From positions 62,001 through 126,000 of the IMG/VR virus record IMGVR_UViG_3300043464_001630: a stretch of 64,000 nucleotides of DNA. One strand, 5' to 3'. The notes beneath the pieces were generated by a model that did not search any database, had not been told where the DNA came from, and saw nothing but the letters and a program-made list of their open reading frames with translations. Positions 3,103-63,241 of the stretch are shown piece after piece (position 1 is the first letter of the stretch; each line of letters opens with the position of its first letter). The translations under genes and the position numbers were made by a program.

Positions 3103-3744
3103 TTAGATTTCAATAGCAAAGCGACGACGTTCATTAGGCCCACGATTATCAAAACCGATAGCACCAGTCACAACTTGTGTAGCAGTGGCGGTAGCCACTG
3201 TGAATGTAGTAGTGGAACGATCTGGGAAATAAAGACTAAAAGTTGCGCCGTCGTATTCTGGAGCTACCTTAAATTGAATACGATCAGCTACAGAAAGTGT
3301 AACACTGGCAGTAGATGCACCAGAGAGTTCATCAAAAAGAATTCCATTTACAGGTACTCCGTTGTAGCTACCAGAAGAGAAAATAGAAGTAGCAGTGATA
3401 CGAGAAGTTAATACATCAACTTGTGTACTGAGTAAGGGAGTAGATGCATAAATTGCGGTAAGCGCACCGAATTGTAGATCTGTATATTTCGTATTCAATG
3501 GAATACCACTTGCGACCCAACCAGCAAAAAATCCAGAAAGAACAGAACTTCCAGTGATAGCAGTATTTTGTGTAGAACTAAGTGGAGGAGTAGTAAATAC
3601 TGTATTAGGAACTGCGGTAGCGGTGTTAAAAACAGTTACAGTGGGAAGAAAAACTACAGAATTATTAGATGCAGAAAGACTAACTCCAATTTGAGGAGGA
3701 TTTTCTGCTGCTGAATTGAATACGAAATTCGTAAATGTTGCCAT
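3103..3744 (-). CDS. Ser/Thr-rich putative virion structural protein
   Basis: 213 aa, S/T/A/V-rich beta-type composition, late motif TAAATA-N5-ATG. Confidence 0.6.
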   Translation of the reverse strand: MATFTNFVFNSAAENPPQIGVSLSASNNSVVFLPTVTVFNTATAVPNTVFTTPPLSSTQNTAITGSSVLSGFFAGWVASGIPLNTKYTDLQFGALTAIYASTPLLSTQVDVLTSRITATSIFSSGSYNGVPVNGILFDELSGASTASVTLSVADRIQFKVAPEYDGATFSLYFPDRSTTTFTVATATATQVVTGAIGFDNRGPNERRRFAIEI

Positions 3745-4465: not shown

Positions 4466-4790
4466 TTAAGTATTTAATGTATAAATCTTTCGGATCTTCA
4501 AATAGATTAAAATAAGAACCGAATTTACTTCCCATGAAAAACGATTCACCATTCCATTCGTAAATTAAAGTATAGTCAGTATTATCTTCGTATTTCAAAA
4601 TGACATCATAATCTTCTATATATTCCGTAGAAATTTCTACTTCGAAGTCTTTACACATAAATTGGTGCTTGTCCATTATGTGATCTATGACAATATTCAT
4701 TTCTGTACTGATATAATCATATAACCCATCTTCGGATTCAATCCTCCACATCAATCTGTCTGGGTCGTAAAATCTACAAATCTTTTTCAT
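4458..4790 (-). CDS. Hypothetical acidic protein
   Basis: 110-aa ORF with TAATG coupling to the upstream gene. Confidence 0.65.
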   Translation of the reverse strand: MKKICRFYDPDRLMWRIESEDGLYDYISTEMNIVIDHIMDKHQFMCKDFEVEISTEYIEDYDVILKYEDNTDYTLIYEWNGESFFMGSKFGSYFNLFEDPKDLYIKYLND

Positions 4791-5440
4791 TAAGATTTAA
4801 TTAAAAAATAACTTAAATGTTTTTGTATCGAAAGCTCTGGGTATACAGGTTTTACTATTTTATCAAAAGCTCTTTTATATAAATTTTCTCTTTGAGAGAA
4901 TCCTCGTTTTGATTCTCTATCGTTTCTTATTTGTTTAGATATTTTATTCATTGAGAAATTCGCTAAGACATCAAAACGAATTATTCCGTTTTTAGTTCTA
5001 TTTTCCCAATCTTTTGTTGTCTTATTTACACAATTTTTATAAGAATTTAAAAACATTATCGCGATATTCATAACCGTAGAAACGATAGTCGTCGCATCGA
5101 ATGAACTTGTTTTAAGTTTAAATTTATCTATTTTAGGACGGAAAAGAATAACGAAAGTTTCTAAAACATCCTCGATAAAAAGATTTCCATTCAATGTCGA
5201 TGGATATATCATCACTTCTATTTCTTCTCCTGTTTTATTTTCAAAATAACATTTTATATAATAAACTGGATTTTTGCTTTTATATTTTAAATGATAATTA
5301 AATATCTTATCAAAATTTGGAAATCTTTCTTCTCTACCAGCAGCAAATACTGCCGTTATTTCTTTTAATGGATAAGAATTATCGAATAATTCACATAATA
5401 AATATTTTTCATAAATCAGTTCATTATCCGATAAGTTCAT
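4790..5440 (-). CDS. Hypothetical late protein with N-terminal IYEKY..L.E signature
   Basis: 216-aa ORF, perfect TATAAATA 5 nt upstream. Confidence 0.7.
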   Translation of the reverse strand: MNLSDNELIYEKYLLCELFDNSYPLKEITAVFAAGREERFPNFDKIFNYHLKYKSKNPVYYIKCYFENKTGEEIEVMIYPSTLNGNLFIEDVLETFVILFRPKIDKFKLKTSSFDATTIVSTVMNIAIMFLNSYKNCVNKTTKDWENRTKNGIIRFDVLANFSMNKISKQIRNDRESKRGFSQRENLYKRAFDKIVKPVYPELSIQKHLSYFLIKS

Positions 5441-10014: not shown

Positions 10015-10653
10015 TTAAAAATCTTCAGGAATGTTTGGGGGAACGTCTAGATGTTCTTTGGTATCAAACTGCATTTGATCTTCGAACCTTTGTTCGAGTT
10101 TTCCCAATTCTCTATATAACTCTTTGAAATTTTCTTCGTGTTCGATTTCGCCTTGTTGATGAGCAATTTTAATTGCTTTTCCGATTTCAGATTTAAGACC
10201 TCCGATATCTTCGATTCTAATTTTTCCGCTAGAACTTACTCCATACATATGTGAGCGTTGACCACCGTGATAATGTTGTAAATCAAACAAAGCAGAAGCA
10301 GCTCCGCTTCCATCAGAAACATAATCATGAAGATCAATCAAAGATGATTCTGACAAACCTTCTTTAACTAATTTTTTTTTAGATTTTGCTTTAGGAAATT
10401 TTCCCTTACCAAATGCGCTTTTATCTGCGGCGGCTTTTTCACCTTTTTCGTTTCGAGCTTTCTTTTTGAATGGCTTGAAACCTTTCTTTTTATCTTCTTT
10501 GGTCTTTTTAAATGGATTAACTTTTGCTGCTTCTGAGATTGTAATTTTAATTTTTTGATTAATTACATTTTCTAGAAATTTATGAGCAGTACTAAAGTCA
10601 TCAATAATTAAAGAATCGACAAATTTTACAATATTTTGTTCTACGATATTCAT
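10015..10653 (-). CDS. Prohead core protein, gp67-like N-terminus with basic linker and C-terminal extension
   Basis: N-terminal FVDSLIIDDFSTAHKFLENVINQKI helix recalls gp67; lies between gp21 and gp22. Confidence 0.55.
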   Translation of the reverse strand: MNIVEQNIVKFVDSLIIDDFSTAHKFLENVINQKIKITISEAAKVNPFKKTKEDKKKGFKPFKKKARNEKGEKAAADKSAFGKGKFPKAKSKKKLVKEGLSESSLIDLHDYVSDGSGAASALFDLQHYHGGQRSHMYGVSSSGKIRIEDIGGLKSEIGKAIKIAHQQGEIEHEENFKELYRELGKLEQRFEDQMQFDTKEHLDVPPNIPEDF

Positions 10654-11396: not shown

Positions 11397-12422
11397 ATGA
11401 CTACAGATTCAGTAGAAATTTTTGAAAATTATTTAAAATCGTTAAACGAAGCACGAGCACCAAAAGGTACTCCTCGTCCAGATGTTATTGGAAGCAAAAT
11501 GCACATTCAAAAAACTACAATGGCGAGTAATCCAGACGCCGCAGAATCACAAGGAGCTACTATTGGTAGAAATACTGCACTAACTCCAACGCAATCAGAT
11601 AGAATTCGTGATAGAAACTTCGAAGAATATATGATGGATGATATGGAAGAAGGTTTATATCTTCAATTAACTGGAGAAGGATCTAGAGTTCCGAGAAATT
11701 CGCAAAAAAATTTAATGAAATTAATGCGTGAATATTCAAATAACAAATACTTTCAAACCCAAGTAGATGGCGATTTAGTAATTCCTTATTGGATAGTTCC
11801 AGAATGTATTCAATATTTCACAATGAATGCAAAGTCTGAAAAAGATCAGAATATCAAACAAGCATATATAGATGCACTCATATTTATGTACGAAGCCATG
11901 AGTGATAAAAGTACATACGAAGATGTGTATAGAAATTCCAAACCTGTATTAAGAATTAAAACAGAAGGAGGAACAAGAGAAGTATCAGATTTGAAAGATA
12001 CATATGAAGAATTCTCTCCTAAAATAATCGGAAGAATTAAAACATTAAAATCTAACCCAGCTATGGGATTAGCATTAAAGACATTTCTACTTCCAAATCA
12101 AACAAAACCAAGAGAACAAATAAAATTCGGATCTGACATTTATAGAGATGCTCCGTTCGTACACGATCCCGAAACAGGTCGTCATGGTATTCACGGAAAA
12201 GGTGAACACGAACCTAAAAATAAATATGATGCGACAGATCCAACATACGGAGTAAGCAGTGCTGAAAATCTCAGAGATAGTGATTTCGAAAAGATTCGCA
12301 TAAAAAACAAAGAACAAAGAGAAAGTACTCCGACTCCAGCAAGATCATTAGGAGCGCCAAAAGTTAAAAAATCTAGAAAAAAAGTTAACGAATCCTTTTT
12401 TATTAAAGTTATTCCATTCTAA
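11397..12422 (+). CDS. Hypothetical late protein with N-terminal IFENY..LNEA signature
   Basis: 341-aa ORF with its own late promoter. Confidence 0.75.
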   Translation: MTTDSVEIFENYLKSLNEARAPKGTPRPDVIGSKMHIQKTTMASNPDAAESQGATIGRNTALTPTQSDRIRDRNFEEYMMDDMEEGLYLQLTGEGSRVPRNSQKNLMKLMREYSNNKYFQTQVDGDLVIPYWIVPECIQYFTMNAKSEKDQNIKQAYIDALIFMYEAMSDKSTYEDVYRNSKPVLRIKTEGGTREVSDLKDTYEEFSPKIIGRIKTLKSNPAMGLALKTFLLPNQTKPREQIKFGSDIYRDAPFVHDPETGRHGIHGKGEHEPKNKYDATDPTYGVSSAENLRDSDFEKIRIKNKEQRESTPTPARSLGAPKVKKSRKKVNESFFIKVIPF

Positions 12423-12889
12423 ACAAAAATCTCAGACAGAAAACTTTCCCACTTTTCGTGGTGCTCTGCTATGTCTTCTTGATTGTTTTTTATGAACAAG
12501 GTTTTAGATAAACCTCTATAAAAATCAGAAGAAGGTGCTCCTCTTTTTGCTCTGCGCTCCATTGCAGCTCTGAAGAAAGATAATGCTACCAGAGTTTTTT
12601 CGGCTAGAATAAATCCTCTATCATCTAGTACATACGGAAGTGGATCTTTTCTCTTTAATCCATTATATACAATAATTGCTACTTGATGGCATTCTTCTTT
12701 GTTTTCTGCAAAAGTAGCAGTCATACACAGAAAAGTTAAAACATCTAATGGTTTGGAAGATAAGAATGTTTCGCTTTTCTCTAAAATTTTAGTTCCGAAA
12801 GCAAAATAGAGTTGTTTTGGATCTTCGGAATACAATACTTTGATTATCTTGGCCGATTTATCATCGTATAACTCATCAATTAAGCTCAC
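12419..12889 (-). CDS. Hypothetical helical protein
   Basis: GTG start with TAAATA-N5. Confidence 0.7.
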   Translation of the reverse strand: MSLIDELYDDKSAKIIKVLYSEDPKQLYFAFGTKILEKSETFLSSKPLDVLTFLCMTATFAENKEECHQVAIIVYNGLKRKDPLPYVLDDRGFILAEKTLVALSFFRAAMERRAKRGAPSSDFYRGLSKTLFIKNNQEDIAEHHEKWESFLSEIFV

Positions 12890-13364: not shown

Positions 13365-15521
13365 TTAACTTTTCAATAATAAACTTCTGATTAAATTGTA
13401 AATCACAGAATCATTTAATTTTTCCTTTTGTTCCGTAGGTTCTACTATTTCTAAATTTTGTAGATCAATTCCAGATATATATTTTATCAAATTTCTGCTA
13501 ATCGTAATTTTTTGTAACTTGCTAGAATAAATAACTGCATAATCTCCTTTAAGTTCTTGTAACTTTGGTAAATAAATAATATTTGCGTTATGAGCACGGA
13601 TATAACCGCTCTCTTTTAATTGTGGTAATTCTATTTTAGCAGCTTTTTCACAATCAATATCACCACTTTCTTTTAATTGTGTTAAATGTAATGAACGTAC
13701 CGAATTCGCAGAAATTTTACCACTTTTTACTAATTCTGGTAATGATAAAGTCTGTGTTAAACTAGCATATATAGCCCCACTCTGGATTAATTCGGGTAAT
13801 GATAAATTTAATGTTCTTCGGCAGAAAATAGATTTACAATATTTTAATTTTGGTAACGATAAATTTCGTATTTCTTCAAAAAGAATATTTTCACTTTTTT
13901 CTAATTGTGGTAATGTTATTGTTATGGCTTTTTCGCATCCAATATCACCACTTTCTTTTAATTGTGGTAAGTCCAAATTTGTCGCTAAATGTGCAGTTAT
14001 ATTACCGCTCTTTTTTAAGAATGGTAAAGATACAACTGTTGCGTATTCGAAATTCATATCTCCGCATTCTAACAAATTAAATGGAAATAATACATATTTA
14101 AGAGGCCATACAAATCTATCTAAAATAACCACCCCATTTTCATTTATTTGATGTTTTCGATTATTTAAAAAATCTTGAACAATTTTATTTATATTTTTAT
14201 TAAATTTTGGATCATCTTTCTTTAAACTTAAAAACCACATGGTGCTACCAAAATTTTCCAAAAAACTATTTGAAAAATTTTCCACATCTTTCAAAGCATA
14301 TAATTGATTTGGCGTAAAATCCAGTCCATCTTCATAATCATAGTCGTCAGGAGTCCATTCCGATACTTCAAGTTCCACTCTTCTTTTTACATTTTGTAAA
14401 TATTGTTTATGTAATCTAGGCTTTCCTTCGAAAACATAATCAGGAATATCATATTTTTCCGTAACATAAATAGCCTTTTCCAAAATCTTATTCCATTCTT
14501 CTTTTGGAATTCCATTCCATTCTTCTGGTTTTATATCTTTAAATGATGCAAACGTCACTCGATCTTCCGTATTTTTAAGTTCTAAGATACTTTCTAAATC
14601 ATAAAATTTTTGATAGAATTCCAATTCTCTGCCTCTAATTCGAACATAATTGAATACATTATTTTCAAAAGGTTCTGTCAATTCTGGGTAAAGTTTCAAT
14701 AATTCTTCTTTAGAAATACTAATATCCTCATTTTTTGTCATCGGATTGTACTCTAATTCTCCATCTTCATCTACATCAACCAACATATAGCGTCCTCTTT
14801 TTTTGAGATAACAGAAATATGTAGTTAACTTGTCATTCCATCTATAATCGTGATAATGATAACTAGCATTTGACCCAGAAATACACAGATTTGTTCCTTT
14901 TCCAAATTCTTTACATCTTTTGACTCCATTAATCGGATTTTCCGTATCATTAGCCAAATACACCGCAACATCATCATTTTCGAACAATGCTTGTTCTGTT
15001 TGAGTTTTTTTAATTTCTTGTGGTTTATGTTTTTCCTTACCAGCCAAGGAATGCACAATATCCATCCATTTTGGGATACCTTTTTGAAAAAGATTAGAAA
15101 ATTGAGGGTTGTTCAGTAATTCCTCTTTCTTATCTAAACTATCTTTGTAATCATGTAGAAGAACTGGTAATGCTCTATTATATAAATTTTTATTAATCTT
15201 GGATTCATCTCCATTAATCTGATTAACATATTGTTGTGTACCAGACATCATAAGCAAAGAATTGATCAAGCTCATTAAATCTTTACCTTCAAATAATTCC
15301 CCGCCTTTTTGTTTTTGTATTTGTAAAATCTGATTTATTATATCAGTAGCTATCGAATCTGCTTCGTTTTTTAAATTTGGATTAGATTCATAAAGAGAAG
15401 ATCCAGTAATAAATTTAGCCAATAATTCTTCAGGATCATCAGATTTTATAACATCTTTAGCTTCTAATAAAATTCTATTATAATATATATCAAATATACT
15501 ATTTTCGTCATTCATCAACAT
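13365..15521 (-). CDS. Large late protein with C-terminal 19-aa leucine-rich repeats
   Basis: Eight consecutive 19-aa LPxLxxSGxIxxxxxxxLx units; central CKEFGKGTNLCIS...YFCY domain; N-terminal RILLEA. Confidence 0.75.
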   Translation of the reverse strand: MLMNDENSIFDIYYNRILLEAKDVIKSDDPEELLAKFITGSSLYESNPNLKNEADSIATDIINQILQIQKQKGGELFEGKDLMSLINSLLMMSGTQQYVNQINGDESKINKNLYNRALPVLLHDYKDSLDKKEELLNNPQFSNLFQKGIPKWMDIVHSLAGKEKHKPQEIKKTQTEQALFENDDVAVYLANDTENPINGVKRCKEFGKGTNLCISGSNASYHYHDYRWNDKLTTYFCYLKKRGRYMLVDVDEDGELEYNPMTKNEDISISKEELLKLYPELTEPFENNVFNYVRIRGRELEFYQKFYDLESILELKNTEDRVTFASFKDIKPEEWNGIPKEEWNKILEKAIYVTEKYDIPDYVFEGKPRLHKQYLQNVKRRVELEVSEWTPDDYDYEDGLDFTPNQLYALKDVENFSNSFLENFGSTMWFLSLKKDDPKFNKNINKIVQDFLNNRKHQINENGVVILDRFVWPLKYVLFPFNLLECGDMNFEYATVVSLPFLKKSGNITAHLATNLDLPQLKESGDIGCEKAITITLPQLEKSENILFEEIRNLSLPKLKYCKSIFCRRTLNLSLPELIQSGAIYASLTQTLSLPELVKSGKISANSVRSLHLTQLKESGDIDCEKAAKIELPQLKESGYIRAHNANIIYLPKLQELKGDYAVIYSSKLQKITISRNLIKYISGIDLQNLEIVEPTEQKEKLNDSVIYNLIRSLLLKS

Positions 15522-16118: not shown

Positions 16119-17294
16119 CTACGAAATCATAAAAATCGCAGGTGAACTGTCGCCGAACGCCGCCGCGTTAGTAAACAATTGTGTTTCTAACTTCTCTTTT
16201 TCAGTTAAACCTTGTTGCATTAAATCATTTGTAAATACTTGTCCTCCGAATAGATTCACTCCGCTAAATTTACCTCTAACATTACCTATCATTATTTTTG
16301 ATAGAGCTAATGCATATTGATATACCCACATTTCTTTTATTAAATCGCGTATCGGGCGTTCTACATAACAATAGATAACTCCGTAAAATCTGACCGAATC
16401 TGAAGGTTCTGGATATATTCTTAATATTTGAGTTCTGTCATCAAATTCAAAAGATCTTTTAGTTGCTAAAACCTTTTCACGAGTATCTAGCCATTGCTTT
16501 ACAGTATACCAACTAACAAGATCAAATCCATAGTTACCCATTGCATAACTAAAATAAGTTTGTTGTGCTAAAGTCTGTTCAATAGTGAAAAGAGTATTAA
16601 TACCAGTAGATGCTCCTTCTTGGAAATCGGTAACTGCTATTACTTTTCTATAATCCATTGCATCATAATCAAACATGTTGTTATAAATTACTGTAGGTTG
16701 ATTTTCGTCTACAGTTCCTTGCATACTTATAGTCTGGCTATATGATGGTATGAAATAAGTTGAAATTGGTATTACATTTAATGTAGGATCAGCCGCAAAT
16801 GCGGTGACTACTTGATTGTAAGTAGAATAATCCAAAATAACATTTCTTTCTAATCCATCTACGAATAATCCAGATAATTCAGAATTAATGGAAAAGAATG
16901 CTTTATTAAGAGCAGAAGCTGATATATAAAAAGTATCTTCGTTCTTTATGTAAGGAGCAGTATCTCTAGATTGTGTACGATGTGCTACTTTGTTTTGTGG
17001 AGAAATATTGCCATTTGCTAACGTAAATAACTTATCAATTGGCAATCCTCTTCCTCTTTCATATAAACTAGAATCTATTACTAGATATTCTTGGGTATAC
17101 CCAGCATATTTAGAGAAAAATTCACATGCTTGCGAAATAGCATCAAATAGTTGGTCTCTGCTAATTTCAACAGAAACCAATGGTGCTCCCAGAGTTCTTA
17201 CGATTCTTTGTGCCAACTTATCAAAAGAATCCATTTTATTATTCAGATTGGTATTCTGAAAAGCCGAAACTGGCGTTAAATTTCCACAAGACAT
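16119..17294 (-). CDS. gp13: Neck protein
   Basis: LGAPLVSVEISRDQLFDAISQACEFF and WVYQYALALSKIMIGNVRGKFSGVNLFGG. Confidence 0.93.
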   Translation of the reverse strand: MSCGNLTPVSAFQNTNLNNKMDSFDKLAQRIVRTLGAPLVSVEISRDQLFDAISQACEFFSKYAGYTQEYLVIDSSLYERGRGLPIDKLFTLANGNISPQNKVAHRTQSRDTAPYIKNEDTFYISASALNKAFFSINSELSGLFVDGLERNVILDYSTYNQVVTAFAADPTLNVIPISTYFIPSYSQTISMQGTVDENQPTVIYNNMFDYDAMDYRKVIAVTDFQEGASTGINTLFTIEQTLAQQTYFSYAMGNYGFDLVSWYTVKQWLDTREKVLATKRSFEFDDRTQILRIYPEPSDSVRFYGVIYCYVERPIRDLIKEMWVYQYALALSKIMIGNVRGKFSGVNLFGGQVFTNDLMQQGLTEKEKLETQLFTNAAAFGDSSPAIFMIS

Positions 17295-17350: not shown

Positions 17351-19588
17351 TTATGCTGCTGGTGGGGGAGCTGATTCTGCTGGTGGAGGAGTTTCTCCTC
17401 CTTCTGGTGGCGCTCCTTCTTCTCCTCCTTCTGGAGGTGGAGGTGGTGCTCCTCCCATTCCACCCATGCCGCCTCCTCCCATTCCTCCACCCATACCACC
17501 ACTTGGTGGTGCTCCTCCACCTCCGGGGGCTCCTCCTGCTTCTGCTTGCGCAGCTACGGCTTGTTTCCAGTTAGGCCCCATATTTTCAATTTGTGTCAAT
17601 TCCCAACGTAATTCTTTATCTTTTCTCAAGAATTCACGATTCGCTTTGATATCTACATCACTCCATCCCAGATATCTCTTCTGTGCAAAAGAAGGAGAAA
17701 TTGATTCATTAGATGCTAACGAACCGAAATTCTGTACTTTAAGTTCTAGCTTCTGACTTTCTCTAAGTTCGTAGAAGTTCGTCGGAACATTAAATTCAAT
17801 ATGAATAGTTTCTTCTTTTAATTCATATTCTTTCCACATTCCTTTTAATTGTAAATGTGTAATAAATCCATTCTTTAATCCACTTGCAAATATATTTTGT
17901 AAACGAATAATAAAACGTGCAAATTTTAATTCTTCACGAAGCATATCAGCACCATCACGAAATGCATCTTGTGGATCTAAACGAGTCGTAGGAACTTTTA
18001 ATGATTGATAAAGCTTCTTAACGAAGTACATTAAATCTTCCAAATTTCCAAGGTTCGAATTTTTCGTAAATACCCCACAATCAAGGGCAAACGTATGATA
18101 ATCATGATATTTCTCATCGTTATCAATAGTCAGTGTACCTACTTGAATTTTTTCTGATAATTTGTTTATAGTTTTTATATAAACCTCATTATCATCAATA
18201 CTCATCATTTTCTGACCTTCTGTTAGATCTTTGGCTTCTACATTTCCAATTCCATATATAGGAAATTTATGATCTAACGTACATACAACATTTTTACCAT
18301 TAGTAAAAATTATTTCCAATACTTCCGCAGAATCTTGGGTAACTCCAGCCCAAGATACAATTCCTTGTTTAATATCACCAGTCTTGTAATCAACGCTATA
18401 AGACCACAATTCCTTGCCATTTTTAAATTCTTCTGTTATTTCAGAAATAGACAATATTCTTCCATCAGTAAGAAGAACCTTCGTATCCATAGCCAAACAT
18501 CCTCCAGCTAATTGCGTAACACTAGTTCCTTCAGAACCAGCACGTTTTGCAAACCAAAAGTTATCAAGAATTGATTGTGGTTTAAATTTCTGCACAATAC
18601 CAGCTTGATCTGGATCATATGTTTTAGAAGACCAATAATTAGTAATTAATTTACGAAGGTATGCTTCTGCTTTTGGTGCTGGCATGTTTCCAACATCAAC
18701 ATTAAACACCAAACGTTCGGGAGCACGAGCCAAACGATAAATGATAATCGAATCTTCGATCATGGATAATTGGCGATATGCTCTTCTTGCGTTTTCTAAG
18801 AATGGAAGACGCATGGTTTTATTTTCATTCCATACATCAGAATGTACATATGTAATCTGATTTTTATCCATCGGAACGTAATCAATACCAACTTGTTTCA
18901 AAGGATTATTCGGATCAAATTTAGGCTTACGATACAAATATCCCTTTACCATTACATTCTGAACATTAGAAAATACAGGATCAATTAATTCAGTAGGAAC
19001 CTGAACAACTCCCAAAACTCCTTCTTCTACATAATCTTTATGAATAATATGTTCCCAATAAATTTCTCCTTCGACTAATAGCTGACGAAAATAACTCCAG
19101 CCTTTATGTTCGAAGTCGAAATAATTAGTATACTTTAAAAACTCCTTTTCGATGGTTTCTTTTTGGAAATCCGAAAGATTGACATTTCTGTATTTTATTT
19201 TTAAACAGCTACTTGTGTGAGGATCTATATTAATAATTTCATCACAAATCTCATCTAATGCATTAGCAACTTCGGAAAAAGCTGCCATGATACGATAATC
19301 TTTAACACGAGCCAATTTATCCTTTTGGATATTGGCATACATTACTTCACTGTAACGCTTATCAGAAGATACGGTTCCTACGGTTTCGTTGTTAAACTCA
19401 AAATTTTGTGAAATCGAATGGCGGGACAAAACTTCCGCACGTTTCATTCCAGTATCTTCAAAATATCTATACTTCGGATTTAAATTCTGAACCATTTGAT
19501 TTGTATCAAATCCAGAATACGGAAGCTTAGATGAAATATAATTCATCAATTCTTGTCTAAAGGATGTAGATCCATTAATTTCAGCCAT
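17351..19588 (-). CDS. gp20: Portal protein containing a mini-intein
   Basis: YRLARAPERLVFNVDVGNMP..KAE.Y, FVKKLYQSLKVPTTRL, REELKFARFIIRLQ; Gly/Pro-rich tail. Confidence 0.97.
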   Translation of the reverse strand: MAEINGSTSFRQELMNYISSKLPYSGFDTNQMVQNLNPKYRYFEDTGMKRAEVLSRHSISQNFEFNNETVGTVSSDKRYSEVMYANIQKDKLARVKDYRIMAAFSEVANALDEICDEIINIDPHTSSCLKIKYRNVNLSDFQKETIEKEFLKYTNYFDFEHKGWSYFRQLLVEGEIYWEHIIHKDYVEEGVLGVVQVPTELIDPVFSNVQNVMVKGYLYRKPKFDPNNPLKQVGIDYVPMDKNQITYVHSDVWNENKTMRLPFLENARRAYRQLSMIEDSIIIYRLARAPERLVFNVDVGNMPAPKAEAYLRKLITNYWSSKTYDPDQAGIVQKFKPQSILDNFWFAKRAGSEGTSVTQLAGGCLAMDTKVLLTDGRILSISEITEEFKNGKELWSYSVDYKTGDIKQGIVSWAGVTQDSAEVLEIIFTNGKNVVCTLDHKFPIYGIGNVEAKDLTEGQKMMSIDDNEVYIKTINKLSEKIQVGTLTIDNDEKYHDYHTFALDCGVFTKNSNLGNLEDLMYFVKKLYQSLKVPTTRLDPQDAFRDGADMLREELKFARFIIRLQNIFASGLKNGFITHLQLKGMWKEYELKEETIHIEFNVPTNFYELRESQKLELKVQNFGSLASNESISPSFAQKRYLGWSDVDIKANREFLRKDKELRWELTQIENMGPNWKQAVAAQAEAGGAPGGGGAPPSGGMGGGMGGGGMGGMGGAPPPPPEGGEEGAPPEGGETPPPAESAPPPAA
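18059..18499 (-). mobile_element. 147-aa mini-intein in portal (no endonuclease domain)
   Basis: LAGG|CLAMDTKVLLTDG (block A), VCTLDHKF (block B), YHTFALDCGVFTKN|S (blocks F/G, +1 Ser). Confidence 0.92.
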
Positions 19589-36413: not shown

Positions 36414-37157
36414 TTAAAAACTTATTTGTTGATTTTGTTTTGCCAAAATATACATCCACAAAATCTTTTTACCTAAAATATCTTTTGTTGGGCGGGTATC
36501 TTTAAATAAAGATTCTACATATTTCACAAGATCCGACCAAACTTCATTAGGATTCAATTTCGTTTTAGTCTTTTGATCTCTTTCAAAGTCTTCAATTTCC
36601 TTAGTTATATAAGGAATATAAGTATTTTCCAAAGTTCTTACTTTAATTTGTTTATTTAAATCATTACTAATAAACAATTGACTAATTCTTCTATCTTGTT
36701 TTAAGAAATTTTTTAGTTGCTTGTATGTCAAAACATAATTACCAATACTAGGAAAACTGAATCGAACATACTTGTTAGCAGTAAAATACTTATCTTGTAT
36801 CTGTTTTATTATTTTATTAGAATTATAAGAACTTTTTTGTTCGTTTTCTTCATCCTTGTCTTGTCCTACAAATGGATTATACTTATCACTTTTAAAAGGA
36901 TCTGTAATATCTTTATACAAACGCTTTCCTACTGCTTTTAAAGCTCCTCCTACCGCATCAAAAAACCCTTCGTTTTGCAGTGTATATTGTTTCAGTAACT
37001 TTTCATAAGTCTTTTCAAATTCTTTCTCTGCCAATACAAATCCTACGTATTCCTTAAAATGAGTAATTTCTCCGTTCTTACATGCGGCAGGATCTACCTT
37101 CATAGTAACCTTCATCATCTCGTGTTTCTTCTGAATAAGATCCGAAAACTTGCTCAT
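36414..37157 (-). CDS. Hypothetical late protein
   Basis: 247-aa ORF, TAAATA-N5-ATG. Confidence 0.7.
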   Translation of the reverse strand: MSKFSDLIQKKHEMMKVTMKVDPAACKNGEITHFKEYVGFVLAEKEFEKTYEKLLKQYTLQNEGFFDAVGGALKAVGKRLYKDITDPFKSDKYNPFVGQDKDEENEQKSSYNSNKIIKQIQDKYFTANKYVRFSFPSIGNYVLTYKQLKNFLKQDRRISQLFISNDLNKQIKVRTLENTYIPYITKEIEDFERDQKTKTKLNPNEVWSDLVKYVESLFKDTRPTKDILGKKILWMYILAKQNQQISF

Positions 37158-39051: not shown

Positions 39052-39477
39052 ATGGAATGGGAAAATATACCCGAAGACGTTAATAATTGGTTTGGTTTTG
39101 TATATTGCATCGAAAGATTGAATGCAAAAGAAGGAGAGAAACGTTATTATTGGGGATGTAAACAATTTATACGAAATTCTAAATTACCGCCATTAAAAGG
39201 TAAAACTCGCAAAAGAAAAGTAGTAAAAGAATCTGACTGGAGAAATTACTACGGAAGTAGCGAAGAGCTAAAAAAAGATGTAGCAGAACACGGAAAAGAA
39301 AATTTTAAACGTACAATTTTAAAATTATGTACTTGTAAATGGCAATTAAAGTACGAAGAGTTGAAGACGCAATTAGAGAATGATGTACTGCTAAGAAGAG
39401 ACTCGTACAACGGCATTATCCATGCTCGTATAAACTTCTGTCCCAAGAGTTTACACGAACACTACAATATATTATAG
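39052..39477 (+). CDS. Short GIY-YIG-like nuclease
   Basis: FGFVYCI...YYWGCKQF...ESDW.NYYGSS..L..D......NFKR.IL..C.....L.Y.E. Confidence 0.8.
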   Translation: MEWENIPEDVNNWFGFVYCIERLNAKEGEKRYYWGCKQFIRNSKLPPLKGKTRKRKVVKESDWRNYYGSSEELKKDVAEHGKENFKRTILKLCTCKWQLKYEELKTQLENDVLLRRDSYNGIIHARINFCPKSLHEHYNIL

Positions 39478-41517: not shown

Positions 41518-41545
41518 TTGAATTATTATGGTTTTGAGGTATAAT
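41518..41545 (+). promoter_or_regulatory. sigma70-type promoter of gp55
   Basis: TTGAAT-N16-TATAAT, 9 nt before ATG 41555. Confidence 0.75.
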
Positions 41546-41554
41546 GCTTATTAT

Positions 41555-43030
41555 ATGGAAATACCACTGGATTTATCAAATTCTCCTAAAAAGTTAAAAG
41601 AACAATTTTATGTAGATCCTGAAAAATTTAAAAAAGCTATTAAGGAATATTATGTAGATGGTGAATGTACGGAATATCTTGGGGGTTGTTTGAATAAAAT
41701 TGCTGAAGGATTAGGTTATAATCCTAAGTTCATAAATTATTGTGTTGACGAAGAAACAGAAGCGTTAACTAAACGCGGATGGTTAAAATACGATCAAATA
41801 ACCCTAAATGATAAGATTTTATCTTATGATGTTAATACTAAAAACTTAGTATGGAGTAATATTATAGATGTGTTTGTGGGTCATCATAATGATTTGATGT
41901 TTAAATTGACTAATATCGGACTTGATGCATTGGTTACCCCCAATCATAAATTTGTAAGTTTGAAAGATGGTATCAAGCCAATCGAAGAATTCCGAACTGA
42001 TGATCATTTAGTTTTGATGGGATCTCATGTTTCTGATGAAAATCAAACGGAAAAATACTCAAATGAATTTGTTCAATTAGTAGGATGGGCTGTTACCGAA
42101 GGAAATTACTTATTAGGTAAACGAACCAACTCTGTTCAGATCTTCCAAAAAGAAGGAGAAAAGGCAGATAGGATCAGAAAAATTCTAAGCGTTCTAAACG
42201 AAGATTACAAGGAATATAACTGGACAAATCCAGAAATTAAGTGCTTCCGCCTTAAGGGTAATACCGCCAATCAAATTGTTGAGAAAGCCGCCAATAAGAT
42301 TGTTAGTATGGATTTCATTCTGGATTTAACACAAAATCAAAGAATGCTTTTGATAGAAACGATGATATCAGGAGATGGCTGGCGCAGAAATAGTATCGAA
42401 AATAAAACAAATTGGTCATATTCCCAGCAAAATAAAGAACACGTAGATAATTTTATTGCTTTATGTACTATAGCTGGATTAAGTACTTCTACACATTTTA
42501 ATACCAAACTGAGAGGTTTTACCAAAAAGCCTTATTATATTGTAAATATCTTTCTTGAGCCTAAGAAGACTTGTTTTTTCGAAAATGTTAACATGTATGG
42601 AGGAAGAGCGAAAGCTGGAGGAAATCGACGAAATGGTAATATTATTCCGAATACGCCAACTGTTCCTTACGATGGAGCTATTTGGTGTCCTCAAACTGAA
42701 TACGGAACATTTGTTTGCAGAAGAGGAAAGTACGTATATATTACTGGAAATTCTTACAAGGAAGATATGATTGGAGATGCACTCATTAAGATGTTCAGTG
42801 CATTAAAGCGTAAGAAGTTTAACGTTGACTCTGAAACTTCGCCATTTGGCTATTTTACTACAATAGCATTCCATGCATTTATTAATAGAATCAAGAAAGA
42901 AAAGAAGCACCACGATACTTTGGTAGAGTATCGACAAAGAAAGTACGAAGAAGAATTGTCTTCTTCTGAAGGGCATATTTACGTAAAGCCTATCTTGGAT
43001 TCTACAGAAGAAGAATTAGTTTTGGAATAA
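41555..43030 (+). CDS. gp55: Late-transcription sigma factor precursor containing an intein (about 154 aa after splicing)
   Basis: YLGGCLNKIAEGLGYNPKFINY|...|SYKEDMIGDAL...SPFGYFTTIAFHAFINRIKKEKK reconstitutes the T4-like gp55 pattern; upstream of gp47/gp46 as in T4. Confidence 0.93.
   Translation: MEIPLDLSNSPKKLKEQFYVDPEKFKKAIKEYYVDGECTEYLGGCLNKIAEGLGYNPKFINYCVDEETEALTKRGWLKYDQITLNDKILSYDVNTKNLVWSNIIDVFVGHHNDLMFKLTNIGLDALVTPNHKFVSLKDGIKPIEEFRTDDHLVLMGSHVSDENQTEKYSNEFVQLVGWAVTEGNYLLGKRTNSVQIFQKEGEKADRIRKILSVLNEDYKEYNWTNPEIKCFRLKGNTANQIVEKAANKIVSMDFILDLTQNQRMLLIETMISGDGWRRNSIENKTNWSYSQQNKEHVDNFIALCTIAGLSTSTHFNTKLRGFTKKPYYIVNIFLEPKKTCFFENVNMYGGRAKAGGNRRNGNIIPNTPTVPYDGAIWCPQTEYGTFVCRRGKYVYITGNSYKEDMIGDALIKMFSALKRKKFNVDSETSPFGYFTTIAFHAFINRIKKEKKHHDTLVEYRQRKYEEELSSSEGHIYVKPILDSTEEELVLE
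41741..42751 (+). mobile_element. 337-aa intein with LAGLIDADG homing endonuclease
   Basis: CVDEETEALTKRGW (block A), LVTPNHKF (B), LVGWAVTEG (C), IETMISGDG (E), IWCPQTEYGTFV...YITGN|S (F/G). Confidence 0.93.
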
Positions 43031-43764
43031 TGAAAAGATTGGGATTTACATTTAAAGAATTGTACGAATCTATAATAGAAGATAATATTTTATTAGAAGG
43101 TTTACAATACACACATTATTCTAATGTAACTTTAACGCATATTATACAAGAATTCGGAAACATACTTTTGGGTAAGTATTGCAGATCTAGTGCCGATTTA
43201 AAATCTACCAGTCCTAAAGAATTTATAGATTTGGTTCATTTAGTACCTTTGGCAGATAATGAAGAATTGAGGAAAAGAATGAAATTTTTTGGTTATCATT
43301 ATTCCATAACCAAACTCATTTCTCCCGAAGAAATGGAATTTTTTAAATTTCCTAGCAAATATAAAAATGTATACGTTTCTACATTTGAGGGAACATATCC
43401 TACTTTAGTAGAAAGAAATAATTTGCCAAGAATTTTATATCATGTTACTTTAAGAAAAAATGCAGAAGAAATAAAAAAACGCGGATTGCTTACCAAAGCC
43501 TCAAAGACTTCGTTTGATCATCCTTCTAATAGAATATATTTATTTGCTACTGTAAATCCTTCTTCTGACTTACCTAAGTTAATTCGAATTTTGGCAAAAA
43601 ACAAAAAAGAAGTCACAAGCGAATACGTAATATTGAAGATTGTGGATTATTATCCAACAGGAGAAAAGTTTTTTCTAGATCCTTCTATGGATATAGGAGA
43701 TGTTTCGAACACTTGTCGAGGAATTTTTGTACACAGAGCAATCCATCCGAAATTTATTGACTAA
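43030..43764 (+). CDS. Putative ADP-ribosyltransferase-fold (Tpt1/KptA-like) protein
   Basis: LYHVT..N.E.IKK.GL...RIYLF...YVILKI...F.DP...I.P.FI; N-terminal ILLEG. Confidence 0.6.
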   Translation: MKRLGFTFKELYESIIEDNILLEGLQYTHYSNVTLTHIIQEFGNILLGKYCRSSADLKSTSPKEFIDLVHLVPLADNEELRKRMKFFGYHYSITKLISPEEMEFFKFPSKYKNVYVSTFEGTYPTLVERNNLPRILYHVTLRKNAEEIKKRGLLTKASKTSFDHPSNRIYLFATVNPSSDLPKLIRILAKNKKEVTSEYVILKIVDYYPTGEKFFLDPSMDIGDVSNTCRGIFVHRAIHPKFID

Positions 43765-46682: not shown

Positions 46683-47243
46683 CTAATTTCCGAACGCAAT
46701 CCAGTATACGTTAACATTCACCGCATTGCCATTACCTGCATTTGTGTATGGAGTAGCACCGGACAATGTGAATGTTACACCAGACCCGACGCCTATGCCC
46801 CCGTATGGTACGGGTGTAATGTTAACAGACCAACACGCATTAGGAAATGGAATTGGAAACGAAAATGCAGTACCTCCTGTGCCAGTACCCCATTGCATTA
46901 ATATTCCATTTGGAAGATATGTGTAACCTTTAGCTGATAAAGAAGCAGTGAATCCTTGTGCTGATAAACTACTAGCCATCCATGTACTAGTAGATCCATT
47001 ATAAGTTAATACTTGACCATTAGTAGCACTATCTGGCTTTTTAATGAAATTAGATGATAACTTCTGAATTACGGTATCTCCTGTTAAACTATTGGTAATA
47101 GAAGAACTTACTGTTTGAGAAATTGTATCAGATACTGTGCTAAAAGAAACTGTACTCGTAGTTCCTATATGATTAATTAAAAATGCATCACCACCTGCGA
47201 GTGTTGTTGTTACTGGAAATTCTGAAATCTTCTTGTTAGCCAT
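46683..47243 (-). CDS. Short tail-fibre-like protein with gp53-like C-terminal domain
   Basis: GYTYLPNGILMQWG...FPIPFPNAC...YWIAFG; N-terminal KKISEFP module; TAAATA-N6. Confidence 0.8.
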   Translation of the reverse strand: MANKKISEFPVTTTLAGGDAFLINHIGTTSTVSFSTVSDTISQTVSSSITNSLTGDTVIQKLSSNFIKKPDSATNGQVLTYNGSTSTWMASSLSAQGFTASLSAKGYTYLPNGILMQWGTGTGGTAFSFPIPFPNACWSVNITPVPYGGIGVGSGVTFTLSGATPYTNAGNGNAVNVNVYWIAFGN

Positions 47244-62296: not shown

Positions 62297-63241
62297 TTAA
62301 AAATTTTGTCCACCAATAAACCCGTACCAATCAGATCCTACTTTTGTAAAAGCAAATACATCAGTTTTTCCAGTAGTTGTATTCACTACGGGAATCACTC
62401 CATTAGCCCATTTTACACTAATTCCTGCTATTGTAAAATTAACAGTAAATGTGCCTGTTTGGGTGATGAACATGGTAATACTGAAAGAATCGGTAGGAAT
62501 AGTTCCAGCTAAAGTGAAACCTGTGATATTTCCTGTTAAATTAATAGGAAAAGTGTTTCCATTATCTAAATTAAGAGATACCGATCCAGTACCAGTAACG
62601 AAACTAGACTTTTCCGAAAATCCTTTCAATACCAAAGATCCTGTCATTTCTCCACCACTGAGCGGAAGAAACTTACCGAATGGATTAAACTTATCTACGT
62701 ATTGCTTTGGTGCTGCATGTAAATTTTGAGTTGGATCTGCTGCTAGTACCAATGATCCAGTCATGGTGTCTCCGGATTTTAAAATGTAATTAGCAGTGCT
62801 TGGAATCGGAATAGCAGAAATTTTACTATTTAATGTTTTTAAATTAACAGCATCATAATCTAAAATTGGATCTTTTACATTAACGATAAAATTGTTATGT
62901 ACATCGACTTTTTGATTAAAGTGCGCTTCTCCAAATGCAGATAAAGTAGCATTAACCGATAAAGTTCCGTTCATCCTCTCTGTTGGAGCGAACGTCAAAC
63001 CATTTTTATCTAATTTATTCGCAATAGACTGAGAAATTGTATTTAGATTTGTTTGTAAATTATCTATTTGAGTTTGTACTGACGTATTAACTTCTGTTTT
63101 TATTTTAGAAGTTAAATTATCAAAAGAAACTTTTTTCGTAAAATATCCTCCAGTTGCGGGATCTGCTATATCAAACGCAGTAAAATCAGTACCCTTTACC
63201 GTGGTACTTTCTGCTAGTTTATTAATGAAAGAATCAGCCAT
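62297..63241 (-). CDS. Tail-fibre-like structural protein
   Basis: Coiled coil, DAVNLKTL / AAPKQYVD fibre joints, LPLSGG.MTG repeats, C-terminal beta-sandwich. Confidence 0.8.
   Translation of the reverse strand: MADSFINKLAESTTVKGTDFTAFDIADPATGGYFTKKVSFDNLTSKIKTEVNTSVQTQIDNLQTNLNTISQSIANKLDKNGLTFAPTERMNGTLSVNATLSAFGEAHFNQKVDVHNNFIVNVKDPILDYDAVNLKTLNSKISAIPIPSTANYILKSGDTMTGSLVLAADPTQNLHAAPKQYVDKFNPFGKFLPLSGGEMTGSLVLKGFSEKSSFVTGTGSVSLNLDNGNTFPINLTGNITGFTLAGTIPTDSFSITMFITQTGTFTVNFTIAGISVKWANGVIPVVNTTTGKTDVFAFTKVGSDWYGFIGGQNF

What the first reader, a model, noticed from the sequence alone, without database searches (positions are those of the whole stretch)
41555..43030. The late sigma factor gp55 is interrupted by a homing-endonuclease intein
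A 337-aa insert (41741-42751) with blocks A, B, C, E, F and G splits the conserved NFINY|S-x-x-EDMI segment. Removing it yields a normal ~154-aa gp55. Inteins typically occupy replication, recombination, nucleotide-metabolism and terminase genes; one in a sigma factor is unusual to my knowledge. The insert is more than twice the host protein, ends in GN (no penultimate His) and has Cys in block F. Every TAAATA gene in this window would depend on its splicing, making it a possible conditional (redox, metal, temperature) checkpoint for the early-to-late switch. That regulatory role is inference.
Basis: partly seen in the sequence, partly recalled or inferred. Interest (0 to 1): 0.85.

Follow-up and report, generated by a model that had tools for sequence, protein, structure and literature searches.

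The report
Homing-endonuclease intein splitting phage late sigma factor
The late-gene sigma factor (gp55) of this uncultivated T4-like phage is interrupted by a self-splicing, mobile intein. The intein belongs to a large family found at the same spot in hundreds of environmental phages, which I found described in no paper, and nothing suggests it acts as a regulatory switch.

Summary
ORF 41528/41555-43030 encodes a gp55-type late sigma factor. An in-frame 337-aa insert (41741-42751) has all intein splicing blocks and a two-motif LAGLIDADG homing endonuclease.

The boundaries are exact. 78 of the 80 best IMG/VR relatives, including sister genomes 83-88% identical in flanking DNA, join ...FINY directly to SYKE... 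with no insert. Of the other two, one is the window's own contig and one is cut at a contig end.

The AlphaFold model (pLDDT 95) matches PI-SceI, PI-PfuI and VMA-type inteins. An intein-free relative matches T4 gp55 (7D7C_F). The site is the H2-H3 loop, just before the helix that binds the RNA polymerase clamp.

It is not a singleton. At least 190 examined homologues carry the same intein at the same site, including the cultured cyanophages B3 and B23, where it is unannotated. I found no paper describing it.

The Gly-Asn end and the block-F Cys are traits of a wider phage intein clade that also occupies portal, DUF4417 and AAA_25 genes. They are not gp55-specific.

The checkpoint idea has no support. 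Intein-free sister genomes and the conserved endonuclease point to an ordinary selfish homing element. Verdict: new member of a known kind, moderate interest.

The parts
41518..41545 (+). Sigma-70-like promoter match TTGAAT-16-TATAAT, which would start transcription at about ATG 41555 (tentative)
   Evidence: 10 of 12 matches. The number of such sites in the region is no more than chance, so this is a consensus match only. It agrees with relatives whose gp55 starts at the equivalent of M10.
41555..41740 (+). gp55 N-extein, 62 aa from ATG 41555 (71 aa if translation starts at ATG 41528); helices H1-H2 of the sigma region-2-like domain, ending ...KFINY
   Evidence: phrog_234 profile positions 6-64. 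Aligns to T4 gp55 up to Y63. Contiguous with the C-extein in the intein-free alleles.
41741..42040 (+). Intein, N-terminal splicing (HINT) part, residues 1-100, with block A (Cys1) and block B (TPNH)
   Evidence: PF14890 hit. C1, T66 and H69 are invariant or nearly so in 114 homologues. All-beta in the AlphaFold model.
42041..42637 (+). Intein, nested LAGLIDADG homing-endonuclease domain, residues 101-299. Motifs at 42071-42106 and 42347-42382, with acidic residues E120 and D212
   Evidence: PF14528 in 50 of 114 family members. Both acidic residues are kept in 103 of 114, including the window. Foldseek matches to I-DmoI, I-SceI and PI-SceI. dN/dS about 0.08 against L162.
42638..42751 (+). Intein, C-terminal splicing part, residues 300-337: block F (W315-C316 invariant) and block G (T335-G336-N337)
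42752..43030 (+). gp55 C-extein (92 aa plus stop), starting with Ser+1; helices H3-H4 with the RNA polymerase clamp-helix contacts and the promoter -10 pocket residues
   Evidence: phrog_234 positions 66-135, E=1.8e-15. T4 gp55 7d7c_F from S66. Window D413, D417, F431, Y442 and T444 align to T4 E70, D74, F86, Y97 and T99, whose roles are given in PMC7892883.

Best explanation
This is a genuine mobile intein inside the gene for the phage's late-promoter specificity factor, gp55.

The gene is translated as a 491-500 aa precursor. The 337-aa intein folds into a HINT splicing domain with a LAGLIDADG endonuclease nested inside it. It then excises itself by the standard route, which here is inferred from sequence: Cys1 forms a thioester at Tyr-1, the acyl group passes to Ser+1, Asn337 cyclises, and an O-N shift follows. 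The product is a ~154-aa gp55.

The intein sits in the H2-H3 loop of the sigma region-2-like domain, two residues before the helix that binds the RNA polymerase beta' clamp helices. The unspliced precursor is therefore most likely inactive, and every TAAATA late gene depends on splicing.

At the DNA level, the endonuclease is expected to cut the conserved empty site (TTYATHAAYTAY|WSNTAYAARGA...) in intein-free gp55 genes of co-infecting relatives. Recombinational repair then copies the intein in (homing).

I read it as a selfish element that must splice fast enough not to harm the phage, not as a dedicated regulator.

Shown here: the anatomy, the exact boundaries, the folds, the family, the empty alleles and the selection on both domains. 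Inferred: splicing, cleavage and homing.
For: Exteins are gp55:
- phrog_234, E=5.6e-21.
- A profile of intein-free relatives hits T4 gp55 7d7c_F at E=9e-11.
- The model of an intein-free relative matches 7d7c_F with TM 0.63/0.69 and rmsd 1.7 A.
- Gene order is uvsY-uvsW-55-47-46-...-43-uvsX. Phage B23 has uvsW upstream and 55-47-46 in the same order.

The insert is an intein:
- PF14890 in 87 and PF14528 in 50 of 114 family members.
- AlphaFold pLDDT 95, pTM 0.92.
- Top PDB matches are the endonuclease-bearing inteins TliVMA, PI-PfuI, PhoVMA and PI-SceI.
- C1, H69 and N337 are invariant; T66 and the +1 Ser/Thr are kept.

Boundaries are exact:
- 78 intein-free alleles have gap 0.
- Sister contigs L004, L005 and L007 are 83-88% identical in flanking DNA and lack precisely 41741-42751.

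Mobility and function:
- The same site is occupied in all 113 full-length database hits and 77 IMG/VR loci.
- P0075 and P0078 have identical extein cores but only 54% intein identity.
- Mini-inteins without the endonuclease occupy the same site.
- pN is far below pS in the endonuclease, the HINT parts and the exteins.

Late promoters:
- TAAATA lies 2-10 nt upstream of 26 of 71 start codons, and 32 of 71 upstream regions hold it against 4.2 expected.
Against: - No experiment: splicing and DNA cleavage are inferred from sequence and models only.
- The window's own intein scores below Pfam's gathering threshold (26.9 against 35.8 bits).
- The penultimate residue is Gly, not His. Block F position 4 is Cys, not the usual Asp. 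The chemistry may therefore differ from the textbook class 1 route.
- dS against L162 is near saturation, so the dN/dS values are rough.
- Only 64 kb of a 236-kb genome was seen, so a second, intact sigma gene elsewhere cannot be excluded. There is none in the window.
Confidence: 0.85

Rival explanations
1. Conditional-splicing checkpoint. Cys1 and the invariant block-F Cys316 form a reversible disulfide or a metal site. Oxidative, metal or temperature stress then holds gp55 as an inactive precursor and delays the early-to-late switch.
For: Two cysteines are invariant in 114 homologues, C1 and C316. Position F:4 lies at the splicing active site in other inteins (PMC2807308). There is precedent for redox-trapped catalytic cysteines in Msm DnaBi1 (PMC6195587). 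The host protein controls all late genes.
Against: The same CVD...WCP...TGN|S/T signature occurs in related inteins in portal, DUF4417 and AAA_25 proteins, so it is a clade trait and not a gp55 adaptation. Closely related genomes lack the intein. Its scattered occurrence, together with an endonuclease under purifying selection, fits selfish homing. Penultimate Gly is common in phage inteins (PMC5050341). No sequence feature speaks for regulation specifically.
Confidence: 0.1
2. Class-3-like or hybrid chemistry. The block-F Cys316, not Cys1, makes the first attack on the N-terminal junction, forming a branched thioester. The acyl group then passes to Ser+1, as in mycobacteriophage class 3 inteins. 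The biology (mobile intein in gp55) is otherwise unchanged.
For: Cys at F:4 is invariant, Thr at G:5 is present in 107 of 114, and the +1 residue is always Ser or Thr. These are three of the class 3 hallmarks (PMC2807308). WCT inteins with an N-terminal Cys or Ser exist.
Against: Cys1 is invariant. Block B keeps the class 1 Thr at B:7 (111 of 114). B:12 is Phe in 103 of 114 and never Trp. Class 3 inteins usually lack the B:7 Thr and need the B:12 Trp. That F:4 corresponds to C316 rests on block alignment by eye, not on coordinates.
Confidence: 0.25
3. Domesticated or weaponised element. The endonuclease is kept because cutting the essential gp55 gene of co-infecting intein-free relatives excludes competitors or drags flanking markers along. 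It would then benefit the phage rather than being purely selfish.
For: The endonuclease is under purifying selection, and both catalytic acids are kept in 103 of 114. Many near-identical empty target sites occur in related environmental phages. The intein tree broadly follows the gp55 subfamilies, implying long-term persistence.
Against: This cannot be told apart from ordinary homing with sequence data. Mini-inteins that lost the endonuclease persist at the same site. 11 of 114 have lost a catalytic acid.
Confidence: 0.15
4. Dead insertion. The intein no longer splices, and this gp55 copy is a pseudogene replaced by another factor.
For: None specific. Only the sub-threshold Pfam score and the unseen 172 kb of the genome.
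Against: The 500-codon frame is intact. All catalytic residues are present. The exteins are under strong purifying selection in two intein-bearing genomes, dN/dS 0.03-0.11. Late promoters are abundant. There is no second copy in the window.
Confidence: 0.03

Closest known systems
gp55 of Synechococcus phages B3 and B23 (MN695334, MN695335; b23_0289, 'hypothetical protein; phage T4-like gp55')
   Same: Same intein at the same site (..NY|CVD...TGN|SYKED..). 337-340 aa, 45% intein identity. uvsW lies upstream and 55-47-46 run in the same order.
   Different: Cyanophage of family Kyanoviridae. The exteins are only about 39-50% identical over the aligned parts. The intein is not annotated in the record or in the genome announcement.
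LAGLIDADG endonuclease-bearing class 1 inteins: PI-SceI (Sce VMA1), PI-PfuI, Tli/Pho VMA inteins
   Same: HINT domain with a nested two-motif LAGLIDADG endonuclease. These are the best structural matches, TM 0.58-0.65. Cys1, block B TxxH and terminal Asn are shared.
   Different: 9-16% sequence identity. The host genes are an ATPase or ribonucleotide reductase. They have a penultimate His and, per Tori et al. (PMC2807308), standard inteins usually have Asp at F:4; here these are Gly and Cys. This intein is smaller (337 aa) and has no extra DNA-recognition region evident from sequence.
Class 3 inteins (mycobacteriophage Bethlehem DnaB, M. smegmatis DnaBi1)
   Same: Cys at block F position 4, Thr at G:5, Ser/Thr at +1, phage association.
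   Different: Has an invariant Cys1 and the B:7 Thr, and lacks the B:12 Trp. It does not meet the WCT definition.
Mycobacteriophage and Gordonia phage inteins in portal, TerL and phosphoesterase genes, and metagenomic inteins in portal, DUF4417 and AAA_25 proteins
   Same: Same wider intein clade, with the CVDxxT...WCP...TGN|S/T signature. Non-His penultimate residues are common in phage inteins (PMC5050341).
   Different: Different host genes and insertion sites. Only 22-27% identity to the isolates' inteins, against 40% or more within the gp55 group.
Inteins in other transcription proteins: archaeal TFIIB inteins (M. jannaschii, M. vulcanius) and eukaryotic RNA polymerase subunit inteins
   Same: An intein interrupts a core transcription initiation or polymerase protein (PMC6801210, PMC1635734).
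   Different: Different domains of life, unrelated host proteins and unrelated insertion sites. The MjaTFIIB endonuclease is degenerate, whereas this one looks intact.
T4 gp55 (PDB 7D7C chain F)
   Same: The exteins share its fold and key residues: T4 L54, E70, D74, F86, Y97 and T99 have counterparts. A TAAATA-type late promoter motif is present.
   Different: T4 gp55 has no intein, has two extra residues (T64-Q65) at the site, and has a longer N-terminus.

Membership tests
Intein (HINT self-splicing domain) | N-terminal nucleophile (Cys/Ser/Thr) at residue 1 | tested here: met
   Cys1 at 41741. Invariant in 114 of 114 homologues.
Intein (HINT self-splicing domain) | Block B TxxH | tested here: met
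   T66-P-N-H69. T in 111 of 114, H in 114 of 114.
Intein (HINT self-splicing domain) | C-terminal Asn followed by a Cys/Ser/Thr +1 extein residue | tested here: met
   N337 is invariant. The +1 residue is Ser here, and Ser (56) or Thr (66) across 122 sequences.
Intein (HINT self-splicing domain) | Penultimate His (block G:6) | tested here: not met
   Gly336 (108 of 114 Gly, 6 Ser). This is not a strict requirement: phage inteins often have Gly, Lys or Ser here (PMC5050341).
Intein (HINT self-splicing domain) | HINT fold | tested here: met
   AlphaFold pLDDT 95. Foldseek top hits are inteins at E down to 2.8e-14. PF14890 in 87 of 114 family members; the window's own score is below the gathering cut-off.
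Intein (HINT self-splicing domain) | In-frame insertion whose precise removal restores a conserved host protein | tested here: met
   78 natural intein-free alleles with gap 0. Sister genomes lack exactly 41741-42751.
Intein (HINT self-splicing domain) | Protein splicing actually occurs | not testable with these tools
   Needs expression and detection of ligated exteins.
LAGLIDADG homing endonuclease (two-motif, monomeric) | Two LAGLIDADG motifs, each ending in a catalytic acidic residue | tested here: met
   VQLVGWAVTE120GN and LLIETMISGD212GW. Both acids are kept in 103 of 114.
LAGLIDADG homing endonuclease (two-motif, monomeric) | Alpha-beta-beta-alpha-beta-beta-alpha fold, duplicated | tested here: met
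   Secondary structure of residues 108-279 in the model. Foldseek matches to I-DmoI, I-SceI and I-AniI. PF14528 in 50 of 114.
LAGLIDADG homing endonuclease (two-motif, monomeric) | Site-specific cleavage of the intein-free allele | not testable with these tools
   Candidate target sites are catalogued, but no assay was possible.
T4-type late sigma factor gp55 | Sequence membership in the gp55 family | tested here: met
   phrog_234 E=5.6e-21. C-extein hits T4 gp55 at E=6.5e-4. The profile of intein-free relatives hits it at E=9e-11.
T4-type late sigma factor gp55 | Sigma region-2-like helical fold | tested here: met
   Tested on the closest intein-free relative (L006, 97% identical over C-extein residues 1-87). 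Top PDB hit is 7d7c_F, TM 0.63/0.69, rmsd 1.7 A, followed by sigma region-2 domains.
T4-type late sigma factor gp55 | Residues that bind the clamp helices and the -10-like element | tested here: inconclusive
   Counterparts exist for T4 L54, E70 (Asp), D74, F86, Y97 and T99. N13, R57, H95 and E77 are replaced. Read from the alignments, with roles from PMC7892883.
T4-type late sigma factor gp55 | TATAAATA-type late promoters upstream of late genes | tested here: met
   TAAATA lies 2-10 nt before 26 of 71 start codons. 32 upstream regions hold it against 4.2 expected. The total count of TATAAATA in the window is not enriched; only its position is.
Class 3 intein | No N-terminal nucleophile | tested here: not met
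   Cys1 is invariant.
Class 3 intein | WCT triplet: Trp B:12, Cys F:4, Thr G:5 | tested here: not met
   B:12 is Phe (103 of 114) and never Trp. Cys F:4 and Thr G:5 are present. Definition from PMC2807308.
Conditional (stress-sensing) intein | Splicing reversibly blocked by a physiological signal | not testable with these tools
   Only the invariant cysteine pair C1/C316 is shown, and its spatial proximity was not measured.

The most novel reading that the evidence does not exclude
The invariant Cys1/Cys316 pair makes gp55 maturation reversibly sensitive to oxidation or metals. In the many phages that carry this intein, the whole late transcription programme would then be gated post-translationally by the state of the host cell. 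That would be a one-protein, intein-based developmental checkpoint, and it could be tested in the cultured cyanophages B3 and B23.
Probability: 0.1. Interest if true: 0.8.

Novelty: new member of a known kind. Interest (0 to 1): 0.5.

Why it matters
Known inteins cluster in replication, recombination, nucleotide-metabolism and packaging genes. A large family that always sits at one site of a phage sigma factor extends that list to the master regulator of late transcription.

Standard annotation misses it. The window's intein scores below Pfam's threshold, and the B3 and B23 copies are labelled hypothetical.

One small protein controls all late genes, and two cultured cyanophages carry the same intein. 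This gives a clean system for asking whether an intein is merely tolerated or affects the timing of a viral programme. It also allows homing and marker exclusion to be measured between natural intein-plus and intein-minus phages.

The clade may also be useful to protein engineers. It is compact, naturally uses Ser/Thr at +1, ends in Gly-Asn and has natural 139-158 aa mini versions.

Tried and rejected
- blastn of the gene against 50,697 phage records found nothing. The lineage is too distant at the DNA level.
- The N-extein alone gave no meaningful PDB hit. Only the profile of intein-free relatives reached T4 gp55 across both halves.
I rebuilt the alignment without it.
- DNA for the closest homologue, P0001 (94% identical), was not retrievable. 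dN/dS therefore had to use L162 (83%), where dS is near saturation.
- The overall count of TATAAATA is not above chance. Only its position before start codons is significant.
- My motif-based extein groups were crude. Group 'D' is a rag-bag, so the 20 label changes on the intein tree overstate transfer. The tree mainly shows the intein diverging along with the gp55 subfamilies.
- Class 3 membership was considered and rejected (Cys1 present, no B:12 Trp).
- A dead-intein reading and a non-intein domain-insertion reading were both rejected on residue conservation, fold and exact empty alleles.
- Six literature searches on gp55, sigma factors and inteins, plus the B3/B23 genome announcement, gave no description of this intein. 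Subscription journals are not covered, so prior mention cannot be excluded.
Full report
THE OBSERVATION

Window 41528..43030 (+) is one uninterrupted ORF of 500 codons. The sequence shows ...GYNPKFINY | CVDEETEALTKRGW ... GKYVYITGN | SYKEDMIGDA....

The two flanks match the late sigma factor family phrog_234 on either side of the insert: N-extein to profile positions 6-64 and C-extein to 66-135, whole protein E=5.6e-21. The C-extein alone finds T4 gp55 in the PDB, starting at T4 S66.

The 337-aa insert (41741-42751) hits Pfam Intein_splicing, though below the curated cut-off (26.9 against 35.8 bits). By tblastn it matches inteins annotated inside TerL, portal, DNA polymerase and phosphoesterase genes of actinophages.

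EXACT BOUNDARIES AND EMPTY ALLELES

A scan of IMG/VR with the C-extein returned 80 loci.
- One, L002, is the window's own contig (IMGVR_UViG_3300043464_001630, 236,391 bp).
- One, L042, is cut at a contig end.
- In the other 78, the codon for N-extein residue 71 (Tyr) is followed directly by the codon for C-extein residue 1, with a gap of 0 bases.

Their gp55 ORFs are 146-177 aa. The window would give 154 aa from ATG 41555.

Three of these contigs (L004, L005, L007) are colinear with the window at 83-88% nucleotide identity across uvsY-uvsW-gp55 and on into gene 47. They lack exactly 41741-42751. L007 lies on a 242.6-kb contig, probably a near-complete sister genome.

The empty site is conserved as FINY|(S/T)YK(E/D)(E/D)M(I/V)GDA, with variation mostly at third codon positions. 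Up to 23 of the 24 central bases equal the window's flanks.

WHAT THE INSERT IS

I aligned the window intein with 113 full-length homologues (alignment A2).
- Invariant: C1, H69 (block B:10), W315-C316 (block F:3-4) and N337.
- Nearly invariant: T66 (B:7), T335 and G336.
- The +1 residue is always Ser or Thr.
- The catalytic acids of the two LAGLIDADG motifs (E120, D212) are both present in 103 of 114 sequences, including the window.
- Pfam finds Intein_splicing in 87 and LAGLIDADG_3 in 50 of the 114.

The AlphaFold model built with this alignment is confident (mean pLDDT 95, pTM 0.92). It has a beta-rich splicing domain (residues 1-~95 and 308-337) around an alpha/beta domain (108-279). Foldseek against the PDB puts endonuclease-bearing inteins first: TliVMA, PI-PfuI, PhoVMA, PI-SceI and PI-TkoII. 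Free-standing LAGLIDADG enzymes such as I-DmoI and I-SceI follow.

Against the intein-bearing relative L162 (protein P0003, 83% identical), non-synonymous change is far below synonymous change in every part:

| Part | dN/dS |
|---|---|
| Endonuclease domain | 0.08 |
| HINT parts | 0.05-0.11 |
| Exteins | 0.03-0.11 |

dS is near saturation, so only the direction is safe. Both the splicing function and the endonuclease have been maintained.

WHAT THE HOST PROTEIN IS, AND WHERE THE INTEIN SITS

A profile of 54 intein-free relatives hits only T4 gp55 in the PDB (7d7c_F, E=9e-11). The modelled structure of the closest one, L006, has 7d7c_F as its single significant match (TM 0.63/0.69, rmsd 1.7 A, 31% identity). 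Sigma region-2 domains follow.

In that model the junction (residue 59|60) lies in the loop between helix 37-51 and helix 62-78. In T4 numbering it falls between Y63 and S66.

According to the cryo-EM study of T4 late transcription (PMC7892883):
- H3 residues E70, D74 and E77 bind the beta' clamp helices.
- L54, R57, F86, H95, Y97 and T99 line the pockets for the -10-like element.

The window keeps counterparts of L54, E70 (as Asp), D74, F86, Y97 and T99 (alignments). The intein thus splits the sigma region-2-like domain just before the RNA-polymerase-binding helix. That the precursor is inactive follows from this by inference only.

The genomic context is T4-like: uvsY, uvsW, gp55, an extra ORF, gp47, gp46, a tail-fibre-like gene, a glycosyltransferase, gp43 and uvsX. 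Phage B23 has uvsW upstream and 55-47-46 in the same order. The DNA polymerase is only about 30% identical to that of any isolated phage, so this is a distant, uncultivated lineage.

LATE PROMOTERS

TATAAATA is not more frequent in the window than in shuffles, but its position is telling. TAAATA lies 2-10 nt upstream of 26 of 71 start codons, exactly 5 nt in 14 of them. 32 of 71 upstream regions hold it against 4.2 expected. Most are in the minus-strand structural block. The replication genes and gp55 itself lack it. The claim that the late genes here depend on a functional gp55 is therefore reasonable.

NOT A SINGLETON

The precursor finds at least 252 protein clusters.
- All 113 full-length hits begin their insert with Cys after ...Y, end it with Asn, and continue with a C-extein that aligns from residue 1.
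- A profile scan of IMG/VR finds at least 524 stretches. All 77 loci I examined have the context N(F/W)xxY | C...(T/S)GN | (S/T)Yx(D/E)(D/E)M.
- They span several gp55 subfamilies, including proteins with 170-220 aa N-terminal extensions on contigs of 200-640 kb.
- Among 50,697 isolate records, only Synechococcus phages B3 and B23 carry it: 504-aa 'hypothetical protein; phage T4-like gp55', 45% intein identity, same junctions. Their genome announcement does not mention it.
- Three natural mini-inteins of 139-158 aa, without the endonuclease, occupy the same site.

The intein tree broadly follows the gp55 subfamilies, which implies a long association. Exchange also occurs. P0075 and P0078 have identical extein cores but inteins only 54% identical. 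The window's C-extein is closer to the intein-free L006 (97%) than to the intein-bearing P0002-P0004 (90-93%). Presence is therefore patchy even among near relatives, as expected for gain and loss by homing.

THE 'ODD' CATALYTIC FEATURES

Both are constant across the family. A profile search of 1.84 billion representative proteins found 1,709 hits at E<=1e-30. Of 82 I inspected, 51 are not in gp55 yet share CVDxxT...TGN|S/T. Their hosts include portal proteins at two sites, DUF4417 proteins and an AAA_25 ATPase. These features therefore belong to a wide phage intein clade.

Kelley et al. report that the penultimate His is poorly conserved in mycobacteriophage inteins, being replaced by Gly, Lys or Ser. 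They also found that changing a native Gly to His caused precursor to accumulate (PMC5050341).

Cys at F:4, Thr at G:5 and Ser/Thr at +1 recall class 3 inteins (PMC2807308). But Cys1 and the B:7 Thr are kept and B:12 is Phe, never Trp. The class 3 definition is not met. A hybrid chemistry in which Cys316 takes part remains possible, and I give it 0.25.

THE CHECKPOINT IDEA

For it:
- Two invariant cysteines, at least one of them at the active site.
- A precedent for redox control of a catalytic intein cysteine in M. smegmatis DnaBi1 (PMC6195587).
- The pivotal role of gp55.

Against it:
- The signature is not gp55-specific.
- Sister genomes do without the intein.
- Most alleles among close relatives are empty.
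- The endonuclease is conserved.
- Mini-inteins and 11 endonuclease-defective copies look like stages of the usual homing cycle.

I rate it at about 0.1. It is untested rather than refuted.

COMPARISON WITH WHAT IS KNOWN, AND NOVELTY

In kind this is a standard endonuclease-bearing intein. The host gene is new. Searches of the held literature for inteins with gp55, late sigma factor, sigma factor, cyanophage or intein-containing sigma returned no description. Subscription journals are not covered. Inteins in other transcription proteins are known: archaeal TFIIB (PMC6801210) and eukaryotic RNA polymerase genes (PMC1635734). A specialist would therefore be interested rather than astonished.

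I file it as a new member of a known kind, interest 0.5. It marks a very populous, unannotated insertion site, and it offers a tractable system (B3 and B23) for asking whether an intein in a master regulator matters to a virus.

Noticed in passing
window, upstream of many ORFs, e.g. 3103..3744(-), 4790..5440(-), 10015..10653(-), 12419..12889(-), 13365..15521(-), 16119..17294(-), 17351..19588(-), 36414..37157(-), 62297..63241(-), 11397..12422(+): The late-promoter-like motif TAAATA sits at a fixed, very short distance from the start codon: 5 nt in 14 ORFs and 6 nt in 4. Late transcripts would therefore be leaderless or nearly so. There is no Shine-Dalgarno sequence in between.
   Followed up: partly
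window 43030-43764 (+): A 244-aa ORF whose ATG overlaps the gp55 stop (TAATG). It has no Pfam or PHROG hit. It is absent from the intein-free sister contigs L005 and L007, where gp55 is followed by gene 47 after about 36 bp, but present next to the intein-bearing gp55 of L162. Atlas leads, which are weak, point to an ADP-ribosyltransferase or RNA 2'-phosphotransferase-like fold.
   Followed up: partly
window 39052-39477 (+): A 141-aa free-standing SegE-like GIY-YIG endonuclease gene (PF19835, E=7.8e-30), preceded by TAAATA. This is a second putative selfish element 2 kb upstream of the intein. L162 has one too.
   Followed up: partly
window 41518-41545 (+): TTGAAT-16-TATAAT lies just before ATG 41555. 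If real, the gp55 mRNA itself would start at its ATG. That favours 41555 over 41528 as the start, as do relatives whose N-extein is 58 aa.
   Followed up: partly
P0039 (residues 89-246), P0040 (85-241), P0112 (78-216): Natural mini-inteins of 139-158 aa, lacking the endonuclease, at the same gp55 site. They retain C1, TPNH, WC and TGN, and lie on contigs of up to 207 kb.
   Followed up: partly
P0172, P0177 (portal, PF04860); P0137, P0170 (DUF4417); P0144 (AAA_25): Closely related inteins with the same CVD...TGN|T signature (300-390 bits to the gp55-intein profile) occupy other phage genes at other sites.
   Followed up: partly
P0032 (593 aa): An intein-bearing gp55 homologue is named in NCBI as a hypothetical protein of a 'Patescibacteria group bacterium' MAG. 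It is probably a phage contig binned with a bacterial genome.
   Followed up: no
window 46683-47243 (-): A tail-fibre-like gene (gp53-like C-terminal domain, PF21882) with a perfect TATAAATA 6 nt before its ATG. It lies on the opposite strand inside the replication and recombination gene block.
   Followed up: no
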